NCBI RefSeq assembly: GCF_964204865.1
Contig: NC_135251.1
Coordinates: 16,306,001-16,370,000 of the forward strand
Direction: 5' to 3'
Origin: Styela clava
Taxonomy: Eukaryota
DNA: 64,000 nucleotides
Shown: in pieces, positions 35,204 through 48,926 of the stretch
Layout: every line of letters begins with the position of its first letter
Position numbering within the stretch: position 1 is the stretch's first letter
Translations under genes and position numbers: made by a program
The notes under the pieces: model-generated
Database searches by the model: none
Told to the model about the DNA's origin: nothing
Seen by the model: only the letters and a program-made list of their open reading frames with translations

Positions 35204-38200
35204 TCAATCAGCCCATGGGCCTGCAATTACATCTGAACATCTCTCACATGGATCAGTAGACTTTACAGTTGTATAAAGTCTGCATCTTTGACATTTTTGC
35301 ATAGCAGCATCACTTCTCTTTATCACACACGATCCTATATCACTGTCATACACAGATGATGAATTGTCATCTGCAAATTTGTCAATGTCAGATGACGACT
35401 CAAGCAGATGAACAAAGCATCTAGAACACCCAAAAAGTTCTCTCAGTTCAGAAAAATGTGAGTTGATGTCTGGTGGTTGCACCGCCTGAAAATGGTAATA
35501 AATAACAAGGTTTGTTTCGGTGTACTTTTAAACAAATCCTGCATATGAAAGCTTGTGGTTAGAGAGATATCAGAATGTGTGCATAGTGCAGGGGTGGCCA
35601 ACCTTTCACATACCATGCGCCACGTTTTAAACATAATGTTTCAGATGCGCCGTAAATCTCTTGTATTCCCACGCCTAATGTCCGCTTCTTGTTGAAATTA
35701 TATAAATTTATAATATATATACATTATACACACATATATAATCAGCTGTTTGGCCTAGCGTCGCATGATTTTACTCTTCTTCGAGATTAGTACTTGCGTC
35801 ACAGCAAGCGATTTTACGCTTCGCTTTTGTTGACAATGGTCATTTGAAGTTTGGATGAAAAAGGTGGTATTTAGGGGTCATTTTCAGCATGTTGTGGGTT
35901 GATTTATAACAAATTTTTTAGGCTTGGGCAATTCAACTGGTTGTTCAATGGTTCTTGGGAGATATTTGGGAAGTCTGGGCAATGGAAAATCCATGTTTCA
36001 AGCTGATAAATGACGATTTTCTATTCTTCCAGAAGTTTCGAACTTTTTACTTCAGTAGGGAAAAAATAGTAAATTTTACTAATTTTTGCTAAAAGTCTAG
36101 AATGAATGTCATAAAGTCCGTCCAAAAGCTAACGTCGATAATCGCCTGTTGTTTCTAATTCCAACGAGCCGTAAGTGGGCGACGTGGAGTAAGGAGAATA
36201 GATTTCAGGTACAATCAAAAGTCACCATGTAAATCGCAAAAAAACGGCTTGGCGTGGAGAAGCCAAGTGCAATTAAAAATTTTGGCATGAAAAGGGTTAA
36301 AGATGCAATGCGCCACCTCTAATCATGCAATGCGCCACGTTTGGCGCATGCGCCATAGGTTGGCCACCCCTGGCATAGTGCAAGAAAACTGTTACACAAA
36401 TAGATGCGACTATTCTTTAAGAATAAAGAGGATATAATTTAATCAAACAGAAAATGGACCATTCACCAATATACGTACTATTTCATGGAACAAGTTTGTT
36501 ATTCTTATTTGTCACTTTAATACCATCTCGTTCGAGTATCCTTGTTGCAAATAGGAAGTAGAAAAAGAGGAAGGAACTACAGTTCGATATACTAGTACCG
36601 ACTATCTATCCTATACTCGACATATTCTGTCCAACCTCAGTCACACTGAACACTATGAAAATTTTAACTTATATTCACCTGAATAATGTCAAGCAACCTT
36701 CCTTTTGTCACCCGCAACTCTACATCAAATAGATGTTCTTTTCCTTGTAGTTTTGAAGTAAATATATCTCTAATATTTATTAAATGTGAGAAGTTATTGT
36801 GTATTGACTCATCATGCCATTCTTCAGAGATATCTGCATCACACCAACCATCCTTGAAGATGCTTTCCGTTACTACAAAAATATACTGTTATTGGCCTAT
36901 TTAGCAATAAATTTAGGGCTGTGGGAGATTTGTCCCATTCTGAGATTCGAACCACAAAAACACTTCCAAGTATGTTGAAAATTCTTAGTAAATTTTATGC
37001 TTTTTTAAATTTCTTCCGAACTTTTGATTTTAAGAACCACAATTGGATTTCTGGAAACAGCTCCAATATCAATAAAAACATACCAAACTTCAAACTTTAT
37101 GGCCCTGGTTATTAAGCTATTTAGCATATTAATGAAAATAGGAAGTGTCAAAGTTCGAACCTCGATGTTAGGGATCAGAGTCTTAATAACAACTGAAGTG
37201 TGGAATCGTAGTCGAAATGTTCAAATGAAGCAGAAGTAAGCTTGCCAATACTGAAGCTTTCAAGAAGTTATCTTCATTTGCATACGCGAAAGCACAAAAA
37301 CTAGCATCACCAGCAAAAAAAGATTTTTGAGTTCAAATGGTGTACCTTATATTTACATAATTAAGAGATTAGGAGGATATTGCATCGTCAAAGCAACCAT
37401 ATAAAAACACAACTAAGGTGATGCTGAAACTACGGAAAACTAAGTCATTGCAATAAACTCTACAATAATACATAAGAGTACTTGGACATGGATGATGCGT
37501 TACAACTTCCTCCATTGAATGTGGCAGGATAGGAGCTGCTGATTTGGCAAGAATATTGAGTATATGGTATATTGTAGTTTGACAAGATCTTCTTGCAACG
37601 CTATTCTGTTCATCACAGTAAAGCCTGATGTACAAAAATAAAAGCAGGTTTAAATATGCATGTGAAATCCAGAAAAGATTGCTGAGAACTTGCTTTATAT
37701 TTTGCTGAAGTGACCAATACCCAATAGTAAATCTAAAGTAATACATCAGTAGCAATGTACTGAACACAATACCTATATGAGATAGTACAGGGGTCCTCCA
37801 GAGCTGTTAATTGGAAATATGACAAGACCAAATAACTGCCAGAACTATTATACACCTGTTTCATATTGCCTTTGATTGGCTTCGGCCTCACTCTGAACTG
37901 CTGCTGTTTGGTCACACACCTAGAAATATGGCGTCTAGCTGCTCCGAGATAAATATTCCTGTCATACTCGCTTCTCATTTTCGTTGTGAAATAGTAATTA
38001 CAATGTACTGCTTTTGGGGGAGGGGTTGGCCAAACAAGGCCAGTATAAATTAATAAGTAGGGTTAAATATTAGCACCATGTAAACGCCTACCTCATATAA
38101 GTGCCCATGGGTGGACTAAAGATTGGGCGACCATGGCCCATTAAAAGCAAAATAAGATATTTTTAAAGAGAGGGGAGCCATAAGTGTCGGGAGTCTTTGC

Positions 38201-47216: not shown

Positions 47217-48926
47217 TTACTCGTCCATTTTTTTAGGTTTCTTTTTCATCTTTTTATCAAACCATGCAGCTGCCATTTCCTCTGCAGCCTTTTTGATTTT
47301 ATCAGCAGAAATATCTTCATCGGCCTCATCGCACATTAATTCAAGCCAATACTCCGACGTTCGAAGCCAGTATTCATCTTTACTTTCCTGTTCCTCAGGT
47401 TTTGGATGTCGAACTTTTTTCTTTATATCACCCTTGGTTTCTTTCGTACCTTGATTGTCATATGTTCCTCCTACAGCTTCGTCAGCTTTTTCACTCTCAT
47501 CTTCAGATGATGACTGACTGTCCGACTCATGCCAGTCACCACTTGTGTCATCAGCTTCATAGAGTTGTTTCCAAGTTGTCAGTGTTTTTAAATTGATGCA
47601 CCACATATCATTCAAAGTAACTTGCTTTTCATCTTCTTCATAAGCTCCTCCATACAAATACATAAATCCGTGTTTTGTCACAAGTACGGGGTTCATTCTT
47701 CCACATGGAATCCAAACAATATTCTTCTTTTTCTCTGAATCGTCTTCGTTTTCTTTCAATTCAATTTCTGTTTCATCTGTTTCCATAGGTTCTTCTTCAT
47801 TTTCATCTTCATTCATCTTTTCGCTTTCTTCTACATTTTTTGATCTTTTTGTCTTTGATTTCTGCTTGGTTTTTCTCAAATCAAATGGAAACCATCTAAA
47901 AGATGTTAAATCAAGACAATACATTGAATTATAAAATATACTTGAAATATCATCTTCCTCGTCTTCATCAAATACTCCTCCAAACATGACGGCACGATTT
48001 CCTCCGATTGTTGCCATTCCAAACGCTGACCGAGGCGATGGCTTTGATCCACTTTCTTTTACTTTTCCCCATTTCCATTTTAAAATGGCAGATGTGTCTT
48101 TGCCACCAATGGTGTCAGGTTCGAGAAAAAACATGTCATCATGTGGTGTTCCTTTATCAATATCTTTCTTAATTTTTACTTTTGAATATCCTCCAATAAT
48201 GACAATGCCATTTGAAGAGGATAATAAATGACATCCAGATCTTGGTGACGGACCTCTTCCTGTTGGAATAATTTTACTCCATTGATATTCTGTTAGATCA
48301 AAACTGTAGCAATCATTAAAATAAGCAAAGTCTCTTGAACTTTCATGAAATCCACCAAAAACAATTAATTGCTTTTTAAAATTGACCATTCTATGGCCAC
48401 TTCTTGGTGATGGCCCTCCTGGTTTGTCGATTTGTTCCCAACGTTTATTTAGTAAATGTAAAATCCATAAGTCTTTATAATGATAAAATTTACTGTGTGT
48501 AGGAGATGCGAATTCCCCTCCAAATATCCATAATTGACCGCCATCTTTTGAAACAGCTACAGCTTGATGGGCACATCTAGGTGGTGGAGGATTAGGAACA
48601 AACAGATTATTCCATTCATTTTTCTTTATATTATAAATAAACAAATCATTATAGACATAAGTTTTATTTCCAGTGTCATATTCACCACCAAATAACAAAA
48701 TTTCATCTTTTTCTGGATGAACAGTAACAGAAAGATTTATTCTTGGTGAAGGCGGTGATGATTTTTCTTCAAAAACTTCATGTTTTTTCTTGTCGATGAC
48801 TTTGAATTCAGCAATCAAAGCTTCCAAATCTTCAACACCTTCGTCTTTTTTCGATTTCTTCGCTAATTTCTGTGCTGCCTTTTCTGCACCTCTTCCTTTT
48901 TCTTTCTTGTTTTTCTTTTTAACCAT
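47217..48926 (-). CDS. KLHDC4: Kelch domain-containing protein 4; intronless
   Basis: N-terminus KKEKGRGAEK, kelch repeats (PPPPRCAHQA, GGEFASP..FYHYKDLW, GPSPRSGHRM), acidic stretches, and a C-terminal HP..ESKDEYWLRTSEYW segment. Confidence 0.93.
   Translation of the reverse strand: MVKKKNKKEKGRGAEKAAQKLAKKSKKDEGVEDLEALIAEFKVIDKKKHEVFEEKSSPPSPRINLSVTVHPEKDEILLFGGEYDTGNKTYVYNDLFIYNIKKNEWNNLFVPNPPPPRCAHQAVAVSKDGGQLWIFGGEFASPTHSKFYHYKDLWILHLLNKRWEQIDKPGGPSPRSGHRMVNFKKQLIVFGGFHESSRDFAYFNDCYSFDLTEYQWSKIIPTGRGPSPRSGCHLLSSSNGIVIIGGYSKVKIKKDIDKGTPHDDMFFLEPDTIGGKDTSAILKWKWGKVKESGSKPSPRSAFGMATIGGNRAVMFGGVFDEDEEDDISSIFYNSMYCLDLTSFRWFPFDLRKTKQKSKTKRSKNVEESEKMNEDENEEEPMETDETEIELKENEDDSEKKKNIVWIPCGRMNPVLVTKHGFMYLYGGAYEEDEKQVTLNDMWCINLKTLTTWKQLYEADDTSGDWHESDSQSSSEDESEKADEAVGGTYDNQGTKETKGDIKKKVRHPKPEEQESKDEYWLRTSEYWLELMCDEADEDISADKIKKAAEEMAAAWFDKKMKKKPKKMDE

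What the first reader, a model, noticed from the sequence alone, without database searches (positions are those of the whole stretch)
35204..48926. Candidate tricistronic eukaryotic operon KLHDC4-RPP21-IARS2
Seen: three co-oriented housekeeping genes, with 438 bp from the KLHDC4 stop to the RPP21 ATG and 603 bp from the RPP21 stop to the IARS2 ATG. Neither gap contains an obvious transposon, although the introns nearby are full of them. I found no AATAAA or ATTAAA on the minus strand in either gap upstream of the acceptor, whereas IARS2 has one at 35183-35188. Both downstream genes have a pyrimidine-rich acceptor AG just before the ATG (tttttttcttag at 46884-46895; tttctttatttag at 45690-45702). 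Known: tunicates such as Ciona and Oikopleura resolve polycistronic pre-mRNAs by spliced-leader trans-splicing. Inference: one primary transcript is processed into three mRNAs.
Basis: partly seen in the sequence, partly recalled or inferred. Interest (0 to 1): 0.75.

Follow-up and report, generated by a model that had tools for sequence, protein, structure and literature searches.

The report
Probable three-gene sea-squirt operon
Three housekeeping genes of the sea squirt Styela clava lie head to tail and are covered by RNA without a break, so they most likely form one of the ordinary operons known from sea squirts, although the leader-splicing step itself could not be seen.

Summary
On the minus strand lie a single-ORF KLHDC4 gene (48926-47217), a single-ORF RNase P subunit Rpp21 gene (46778-46266) and an intron-rich mitochondrial isoleucyl-tRNA synthetase gene (ATG 45663, stop 35204). 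The gaps are 438 and 602 nt. Both are single-copy, and neither has AATAAA or ATTAAA before a strong pyrimidine-AG acceptor.

The genome is Styela clava (98% identity to its annotated KLHDC4). RNA assemblies from three studies cover both gaps at exon-like depth, while nearby introns have none. One contig runs from the KLHDC4 start through Rpp21. Another runs from the Rpp21 end into spliced IARS2. In one run the Rpp21 contig stops on the G of the predicted acceptor.

These features match published Ciona operons: abutting cistrons, missing poly(A) signals, and single-exon upstream genes.

Still unshown: no spliced-leader letters, no mapped poly(A) ends, no single-molecule bridge and no promoter data. 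Contigs cannot prove one transcript. I could not identify the Styela leader gene.

Verdict: a probable (about 0.55) ordinary tunicate operon, a new member of a known kind. This scan has noted many such candidates on other DNA of this genome. Interest is low to moderate.

The parts
49787..49816 (-). 3' end of an upstream non-coding 5' exon of KLHDC4. Only 30 letters were seen and the transcription start is not mapped.
   Evidence: the joint 49787->48982 in X3 (contig depth 83.6, side 30); the exon ends ...TTTTTGG and is followed by GTAGAT.
48983..49786 (-). 804-nt intron in the 5' leader of KLHDC4 (GT..AG). It holds a palindromic MITE-like repeat at about 49340-49783.
   Evidence: joint seen in 1 of 4 runs, while X1's contig runs unspliced to 49097; splice-site letters; 2216 first-look candidates, 40 scored, near full-length copies at 91-95% identity.
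47217..48926 (-). KLHDC4 coding sequence, one open frame, 569 aa; first cistron.
   Evidence: Single copy in the genome.
46779..47216 (-). Gap 1: the likely KLHDC4 3' UTR (47216 to about 46885) plus the Rpp21 5' UTR (46883-46779, 105 nt, three upstream ATGs).
   Evidence: Single copy. No A[AT]TAAA. Crossed by RNA contigs in X2, X3 and X4, and at depth 2.3 in X1. Upstream ATGs.
46884..46898 (-). Predicted trans-splice acceptor of Rpp21 (TATTTTTTTTCTTAG). The exon would start at 46883.
   Evidence: the only acceptor in gap 1 with 10 or more of 12 pyrimidines. X1 contig 3 (46265-46884, depth 26.6) ends on the G, and the next contig upstream has depth 2.3.
46266..46778 (-). Rpp21 (RNase P protein subunit) coding sequence, one open frame, 170 aa; second cistron.
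   Evidence: Single copy.
45664..46265 (-). Gap 2: the likely Rpp21 3' UTR (46265 to about 45692) plus a 26-nt IARS2 5' UTR.
   Evidence: Single copy. No A[AT]TAAA upstream of the acceptor. In 45906-46264 the two haplotype contigs sum to 25.1 in X1 and 51.5 in X4, equal to Rpp21's 26.6 and 50.8. X3 contig 15 runs from 46294 into spliced IARS2.
45690..45704 (-). Predicted trans-splice acceptor of IARS2 (TATTTCTTTATTTAG). The exon would start at 45689.
   Evidence: Not tested with reads; contigs run through it in X1, X3 and X4.
45498..45663 (-). IARS2 first coding exon, with a presequence-like N-terminus followed by [10 protein letters not shown].
   Evidence: The exon end is fixed by the joint.
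45419..45497 (-). IARS2 intron 1, 79 nt, GT..AG.
   Evidence: skipped in 4 of 4 runs, which shows that the runs are RNA; splice-site letters.
35183..45418 (-). Rest of IARS2: exon 2 at 45418-45296, further exons, stop codon at 35206-35204, and AATAAA at 35188-35183; third and last cistron.
   Evidence: I did not build a joined exon model.

Best explanation
KLHDC4, Rpp21 and IARS2 of Styela clava form a tunicate (Ciona-type) operon. Transcription starts upstream of 49787 and runs through all three genes. The KLHDC4 and Rpp21 messages end in the long, signal-poor stretches after their stop codons. The Rpp21 and IARS2 messages get their 5' ends by spliced-leader trans-splicing at the unpaired acceptors ending at 46884 and 45690. 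IARS2 alone ends at a canonical AATAAA.

Shown here: the gene order, the sequence features and unbroken RNA coverage.

Inferred: a single promoter, leader addition at these two sites, and where the upstream messages end.
For: 1. RNA coverage (four runs from three studies).
- The 79-nt IARS2 intron is spliced out in 4 of 4 runs.
- Bins 45000-45196 (IARS2 intron 2) and 50516-50712 have depth 0 in all four runs, so this is RNA and not DNA.
- Both gaps are covered. X2 contig 9 is one piece from 45879 to 48935: the KLHDC4 CDS, gap 1, Rpp21 and 387 nt of gap 2.
- X3 contig 15 runs from 46294 (inside the Rpp21 CDS) through gap 2 into IARS2 exon 1 and is spliced to exon 2.
- X4 contigs 24, 25 and 26 chain with k-1 overlaps at depths 50.8, 64.2 and 52.8.
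- In X3 depth falls smoothly: 83.6 (CDS), 126.5, 74.4, 50.8 (46963-47103), 36.3 (Rpp21). KLHDC4-level RNA therefore reaches within 78 nt of the acceptor.

2. Contig end. In X1 the Rpp21 contig ends exactly on the acceptor G (46884) and depth drops from 26.6 to 2.3 upstream.

3. Sequence features. Gap 1 has one strong acceptor and gap 2 has two, and there is no A[AT]TAAA upstream of them.

4. Published Ciona operons (passages read).
- Cistrons abut without intergenic DNA.
- 16 of 18 upstream cistrons lack AATAAA.
- 38% of operon genes, and 60% of 5'-most genes, are single-exon.

5. Copy number. Both upstream genes are the only copies in the genome, so they are the working genes and not spare retrocopies. 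The gaps are single-copy in a transposon-rich neighbourhood.
Against: - No spliced-leader letters were seen at 46883 or 45689. X1 contig 3 ends without extra letters, and none of the 24 loose ends listed (of 93) lies there.
- Contigs join overlapping reads, so a contig across two genes does not show one molecule; the tool says so itself.
- Roughly ten contig ends fall in gap 1 across the four runs, so one landing on the acceptor has a chance of several percent.
- X1 shows a tenfold dip over 46885-47021. This also fits two separate units with a short spacer.
- The missing poly(A) signals are only weakly beyond chance (5.6% of shuffles).
- From 46883 the Rpp21 leader would be 105 nt long with three upstream ATGs, which is long for a trans-spliced message.
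- The stop-to-acceptor distances (332 and 575 nt) leave room for internal promoters. Monocistronic trans-spliced Ciona genes have outrons of about 458 nt.
- An unidentified animal with an intronless KLHDC4 has no Rpp21 or IARS2 within 2.7 kb downstream, so the linkage is not shown to be conserved.
- I could not identify a working leader RNA gene in this genome.
Confidence: 0.55

Rival explanations
1. The three genes are tightly packed but separately transcribed. Rpp21 and IARS2 each have a promoter of their own inside the upstream gene's 3' UTR or coding part. Their transcripts may still be leader trans-spliced at the same acceptors, from short outrons of their own. The unbroken RNA coverage then comes from overlapping 3' UTRs and outrons.
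For: - Monocistronic trans-spliced genes of Ciona have outrons with a median of 458 nt. An outron of that size would overlap the upstream gene here and look the same in contigs.
- X1 shows a tenfold dip in depth between the two genes.
- Depths of neighbouring cistrons differ up to about twofold: X3 has 83.6 against 36.3, and X4 has 50.8 against 28.8.
- Another follow-up in this genome judged a looser seven-gene cluster to be separate genes (unchecked note).
Against: - In X3 the depth at 46963-47103 (50.8) exceeds that of Rpp21 (36.3), so most of that RNA belongs to KLHDC4 and not to an Rpp21 outron.
- In Ciona, same-strand neighbours without an untranscribed gap are taken as operons, and 72% of downstream genes had leader-bearing cDNAs.
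- The 214 nt before the IARS2 acceptor carry 9 variant sites among those listed, about four times the density in the coding parts. This does not look like a constrained promoter.
Confidence: 0.32
2. There is no trans-splicing here. The genes are conventional, with ordinary start sites near 46884 and 45690. The contigs bridge them only through rare read-through RNA and assembly of overlapping ends.
For: - No leader letters were seen.
- Contig depth is one mean per contig and hides local dips.
Against: - A start site exactly after the only strong pyrimidine-AG tract in gap 1 would be a coincidence.
- Bridging regions carry exon-like depth in 3 of 4 runs, not trace depth.
- About half of Ciona genes are trans-spliced.
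Confidence: 0.1

Closest known systems
Ciona intestinalis operons resolved by spliced-leader trans-splicing (Satou et al. 2006, PMC1488885; Satou et al. 2008, PMC2760879; passages read)
   Same: - Co-oriented, functionally unrelated housekeeping genes.
- No untranscribed DNA between them at the contig level.
- Upstream cistrons without AATAAA.
- Single-exon coding parts in the first and second genes.
- A pyrimidine-AG acceptor in front of each downstream ATG.
- A three-gene size: 185 of the 1,310 Ciona operons have three genes.
   Different: - The species is a stolidobranch, Styela. My searches of the held library listed no paper on operons or leader splicing in Styela.
- The points where cistrons abut are not mapped.
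- One run suggests a spacer of about 140-170 nt at low depth instead of direct abutment.
- The first gene has a cis-spliced 5' leader intron.
- Leader addition was not observed.
Oikopleura dioica operons (as described in the SLOPPR paper, PMC7986045, passages read)
   Same: One leader serves both single genes and operons, and upstream genes need not be trans-spliced.
   Different: Oikopleura operons were predicted from intercistronic distances of at most 60 bp in a very compact genome. This locus sits in a 377-Mb genome with long introns full of transposons.
Caenorhabditis SL2-type operons (as described in PMC1488885 and PMC7986045)
   Same: A polycistronic precursor is cut into messages by 3' end formation plus trans-splicing. 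A real intercistronic spacer would resemble this type.
   Different: Tunicates have a single leader and no SL2-type specialisation. Nothing here tests for a spacer element.

Membership tests
Ciona-type (tunicate) SL-resolved operon | Two or more consecutive genes on the same strand. | tested here: met
   Three minus-strand genes in a row.
Ciona-type (tunicate) SL-resolved operon | No intergenic distance between the upstream message's 3' end and the downstream acceptor. The 2008 working definition allowed under 100 bp. | tested here: inconclusive
   RNA contigs cover both gaps in 3 of 4 runs. In X3, RNA at KLHDC4-like depth reaches 46963, 78 nt from the acceptor. X1 has only depth 2.3 over 46885-47021. 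Poly(A) sites were not mapped.
Ciona-type (tunicate) SL-resolved operon | The 5' ends of all genes but the first are spliced-leader acceptor sites. | tested here: inconclusive
   Strong unpaired acceptors are present. One contig of one run ends on the acceptor G. No leader letters were seen. Raw reads were not available, since all four runs were contigs.
Ciona-type (tunicate) SL-resolved operon | RNA that spans two cistrons (the unresolved precursor). | tested here: inconclusive
   X2 contig 9 spans KLHDC4 and Rpp21. X3 contig 15 spans the Rpp21 end and spliced IARS2. A contig is not one molecule.
Ciona-type (tunicate) SL-resolved operon | Upstream cistrons usually lack AATAAA near their 3' end. 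This is typical but not strictly defining: 16 of 18 in Ciona. | tested here: met
   Zero A[AT]TAAA in 905 nt upstream of the two acceptors, against about 2.5 expected.
Ciona-type (tunicate) SL-resolved operon | One promoter for the whole unit. | not testable with these tools
   No CAGE, chromatin or reporter data were within reach. The 5' exon ends at 49787 and the start site is unmapped.
Ciona-type (tunicate) SL-resolved operon | The organism has a spliced-leader RNA. | tested here: inconclusive
   - The Ciona leader sequence occurs exactly twice in the genome, without a GT donor after it.
- A 15-of-16 match sits in front of tRNA genes in an array on C3, again without a GT donor.
- A 13-of-16 match with AG|GT occurs in an array on C10 with 84 exact copies of the 16-mer. 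In the looser pattern search 18 places in that array were followed by GT. All 4 copies I sampled from the rest read GG at the donor.

The most novel reading that the evidence does not exclude
Styela operons may be looser than those of Ciona. Here the stop-to-acceptor stretches are 332 and 575 nt. In one study, RNA depth falls tenfold over about 140-170 nt in front of the Rpp21 acceptor, while three other runs show full depth there. That pattern would fit a real intercistronic spacer whose use depends on which poly(A) site the upstream gene chooses. How tightly the cistrons are coupled would then vary between samples, a form between Ciona's abutting cistrons and the spaced nematode type. A low-depth joint (47016 joined back to 45700, in X2 and X4) could further mean that some haplotypes carry a tandem duplicate of the middle cistron inside the operon.
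Probability: 0.15. Interest if true: 0.5.

Novelty: new member of a known kind. Interest (0 to 1): 0.3.

Why it matters
If true, it adds one well-delimited three-gene operon to a stolidobranch ascidian. My searches of the held library listed no paper that describes operons or leader splicing in Styela. It would show that the Ciona hallmarks, namely single-exon upstream genes, missing poly(A) signals and no untranscribed spacer, persist in a genome more than twice as large (Ciona: about 160 Mb, passage read) and rich in transposons.

The long, transposon-free stretches between the cistrons make this locus handy for mapping where the upstream message ends relative to the downstream acceptor. How such operons are resolved is still open in Ciona. 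It does not change what is known about tunicate gene expression.

Tried and rejected
1. Looking for the leader itself.
- The Ciona leader (taken) has no match in the window with up to 2 mismatches.
- In the genome it has two exact matches and many one-mismatch matches. The 12 places whose flanks I read (L002-L013, among them both exact matches) do not look like leader RNA genes.
- The excess of one-mismatch hits is an array on C3, where the 16-mer lies 38 nt in front of tRNA genes and is followed by TTGATG, not GT. I do not take it for a leader gene.
- A looser pattern found an array on C10, and 84 exact copies of its 16-mer lie there on one strand. Seventeen places carrying this 16-mer, plus one one-letter variant, were followed by GT.
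- All 4 other copies I sampled read GG at the donor.
- The fold of the region is no better than that of shuffles (z = 0.28). The identity of this array is left open.

2. Conservation of the gene order.
- One metagenome scan gave two contigs of one unidentified animal with an intronless KLHDC4 (50% identity). No Rpp21 or IARS2 lies within 2.7 kb downstream. The animal's identity is unknown, so this counts for little.
- Matching contig lengths between KLHDC4 and Rpp21 relatives showed no shared contig.
- No KLHDC4 relative among the 120 listed carries the Rpp21 domain, so there is no sign of fused gene models.

3. The joint 47016 -> 45700, with 8 letters between, in X2 and X4.
- It is not a repeat: 46890-47060 and both gaps are single-copy.
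- It has no splice-site letters.
- A tandem duplicate of the Rpp21 segment in some haplotypes would explain it, but this is untested.

4. The contig piece 50178/50189-50344 (X2, X3) ends at a place without GT or AG on either strand. I could not assign it to a gene.

5. Papers. Vandenberghe 2001 (PMC312621) is not held. Supplements are closed, so the Ciona operon lists (additional files of PMC2760879 and PMC7986045) could not be checked. They might show whether the Ciona orthologues form an operon.

6. I did not build a joined IARS2 protein. Exons were searched one by one.
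Full report
WHAT IS THERE

The window is part of contig C2 of a 377-Mb genome. The KLHDC4-like open frame is 98% identical over its full length to the UniRef entry 'kelch domain-containing protein 4-like, Styela clava'. The Rpp21 frame is 99% identical, over 145 residues, to 'ribonuclease P protein subunit p21-like, Styela clava'.

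Three genes lie on the minus strand.
- KLHDC4: one open frame, 48926-47217, 569 aa, with Kelch families and a weak DUF4110 match.
- Rpp21: one open frame, 46778-46266, 170 aa, Pfam Rpr2/Rpp21 E=1.1e-22.
- IARS2: ATG at 45663 and stop at 35206-35204. Class I synthetase and anticodon-domain matches lie on exon-sized ORFs searched one by one.

KLHDC4 and Rpp21 are each the only copy in the genome.

- Neither gap has AATAAA or ATTAAA on the minus strand upstream of its acceptor. The single AATAAA of gap 2 (45688-45683) comes just after the acceptor AG.
- About 2.5 such signals were expected in the 905 nt, and 5.6% of 5000 shuffles also gave none. Taken alone this is weak.
- Gap 1 has exactly one acceptor with 10 or more of 12 pyrimidines before NAG, ending at 46884. 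Gap 2 has two, ending at 45765 and 45690.
- Both gaps are single-copy. The element at 49340-49800 gave 2216 first-look candidates, of which 40 were scored, with near full-length copies at 91-95% identity.
- IARS2 has AATAAA at 35188-35183.

RNA EVIDENCE (my single read-laying run, on 45000-50900)

The four runs, from three studies, were all Logan contigs labelled 'RNA?'. They are RNA for two reasons.
- The 79-nt IARS2 intron (45497-45419, GT..AG) is skipped in 4 of 4 runs.
- IARS2 intron 2 (bin 45000-45196) and bin 50516-50712 have depth 0 in all four runs.

Against that background both gaps are covered.
- X2 contig 9 is one 3057-letter piece from 45879 to 48935. It holds the KLHDC4 coding part, all of gap 1, Rpp21 and 387 nt of gap 2.
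- X3 contig 15 runs from 46294 (inside the Rpp21 coding part) through all of gap 2 and IARS2 exon 1, and is spliced to exon 2.
- X4 contigs 24, 25 and 26 chain by k-1 overlaps from 46265 to 48946, at depths 50.8, 64.2 and 52.8.
- In X3 the depths step down without a trough: 83.6 (KLHDC4), 126.5 (47207-47432), 74.4 (at 47150 and 47205), 50.8 (two haplotype contigs at 46963-47103) and 36.3 (46304-46992).
- Because 50.8 exceeds the Rpp21 value, most RNA at 46963-47103 belongs to KLHDC4. Its message therefore reaches within 78 nt of the acceptor.
- In gap 2, the two haplotype contigs over 45906-46264 sum to 25.1 in X1 and 51.5 in X4. That equals Rpp21's 26.6 and 50.8, so this stretch is the Rpp21 3' UTR.

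X1 differs from the other runs.
- The KLHDC4 contig stops at 47054.
- A contig of depth 2.3 covers 46859-47021.
- The Rpp21 contig (depth 26.6) ends exactly at 46884, the G of the predicted acceptor.
- The bin depths of X1 are fully accounted for by these contigs, so nothing else of X1 was laid there.

X2 has almost nothing laid over 45603-45878. That stretch is highly polymorphic in the other runs, and a hole there proves nothing.

LIMITS OF THE RNA EVIDENCE

- Contigs cannot show molecule ends, strand or single molecules. The tool itself warns that a contig across two genes shows no single transcript.
- No loose end with leader-like letters is listed at 46883 or 45689. Only 24 of 93 loose ends were shown.
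- X1 contig 3 carries no extra letters at its end.
- About ten contig ends fall in gap 1 across the four runs, so one of them landing on the acceptor is expected by chance at the level of several percent.
- Depth is one mean per contig.

UPSTREAM OF KLHDC4

In X3 a contig splices 49787 to 48982, removing 804 nt (GT..AG) that contain the MITE-like repeat. In X1 the contig runs unspliced to 49097. KLHDC4 thus has a non-coding 5' exon, and the start of the unit lies beyond 49787 and is unmapped. I see a strong plus-strand donor (TTG|GTAAGT) near 50701 but could not assign the RNA pieces at 50178-50344.

COMPARISON WITH WHAT IS KNOWN

From passages read in PMC1488885 and PMC2760879:
- Ciona operons have cistrons that abut without intergenic DNA, and the upstream poly(A) site sits at the downstream acceptor AG.
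- 16 of 18 upstream cistrons lack AATAAA.
- 38% of operon genes, and 60% of the 5'-most genes, are single-exon.
- 185 of the 1,310 operons have three genes.
- 72% of downstream genes had leader-bearing cDNAs.

The locus fits each sequence-level hallmark.

From PMC11155486: monocistronic trans-spliced Ciona genes have outrons of about 458 nt. A promoter of its own for Rpp21 or IARS2, inside the upstream gene, would therefore look the same in contigs. This is the main rival.

THE LEADER RNA GENE

I could not identify it. The exact Ciona leader has two genomic matches, neither followed by a donor.

A 15-of-16 match occurs at least 75 times in a tRNA gene array on C3, 38 nt before a tRNA, and is followed by TTGATG.

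For the C10 array:
- A 13-of-16 match with AG|GT lies in an array on C10.
- 84 exact copies of its 16-mer lie there, all on one strand, with 0 elsewhere and 0 for the control word.
- 18 places in that array were followed by GT in the looser search.
- All 4 other copies I sampled read GG at the donor.

An earlier first-reader note mentions a leader RNA gene array elsewhere in this genome. I could not tell whether it is the same array.

CONSERVATION

Two metagenome contigs of one unidentified animal hold an intronless KLHDC4 at 50% identity, with no Rpp21 or IARS2 within 2.7 kb downstream.

LITERATURE

In the held library no paper holds 'Styela' together with 'spliced leader', or those two terms together with 'operon'. 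Four papers hold 'Styela' with 'trans-splic', and 28 hold 'Styela' with 'operon'. In the listings, these mentions are single or incidental, or concern bacteria. I saw listings only, not full texts.

VERDICT

The locus is most likely (0.55) an ordinary tunicate operon. It is a new member of a known kind, in a species where operons are not yet described in the papers I could search. This scan has already noted many such candidates in the same genome. Separate, overlapping transcription units remain a serious rival (0.32). Leader splicing, poly(A) ends and the promoter are inferred, not shown.

Noticed in passing
G000:C3:24847565-24961794 (sample: L014 1-6901): In a tRNA gene array of about 114 kb, one kind of unit carries a 16-mer that differs from the Ciona spliced leader at one position. 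It lies 38 nt in front of a leucine-type tRNA gene and can pair with a stretch just downstream. It is followed by TTGATG and not by a GT donor. It may be chance, a relic or a tRNA-linked small RNA.
   Followed up: partly
G000:C10:22364930-23191996 (samples L015-L021, L024-L027): 84 exact copies of a 16-mer that matches the Ciona leader at 13 of 16 positions, all on one strand, spaced 3-30 kb apart inside a unit that is near-identical over at least 400 bp. In the looser pattern search 18 places in this array were followed by GT, and all 4 other copies I sampled read GG. A TATAAA lies about 25 nt upstream.
   Followed up: partly
window 47016 and 45700: Low-depth RNA contigs in X2 (6.3) and X4 (2.95) join 45700 back to 47016 with 8 letters between. 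There are no splice-site letters, and the sequence on both sides is single-copy. This would fit a tandem duplicate of the 1.3-kb Rpp21 segment in some haplotypes.
   Followed up: partly
window 46345 (Rpp21 C-terminal tail): X3 has a one-base deletion here. The annotated Styela clava protein (153 aa) has a different tail after ...GKQLNEK. The unconserved C-terminal tail of Rpp21 therefore carries a frameshift polymorphism.
   Followed up: partly
window 49340-49800 and 51460-52010: A palindromic MITE-like element with thousands of genomic copies (2216 first-look candidates). It shows very high summed RNA contig depth (437-2778). The first copy sits in the KLHDC4 leader intron. I took the second stretch for another copy by eye only.
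   Followed up: partly
window 52475-56446 (+): A single 1323-aa open frame on the opposite strand with a weak match to the WASH complex FAM21 'CAP-ZIP_m' region (E=8.4e-6, below the curated cut-off). It is probably the divergent neighbour that shares the upstream region.
   Followed up: no
window 354-6479 (+): A 2041-aa single open frame with no Pfam match.
   Followed up: no
window 45603-45905: Very dense polymorphism in front of the IARS2 acceptor: 9 variant sites in 214 nt among those listed. X2 has no reference-like contigs laid here at all.
   Followed up: no
L023 3881-4375 and 6386-8077: Metagenome contigs of an unidentified animal hold an intronless KLHDC4. A 164-aa ORF lies 2 kb upstream on the same strand; it reminded me of Mediator subunit MED22, from recall and untested.
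   Followed up: no
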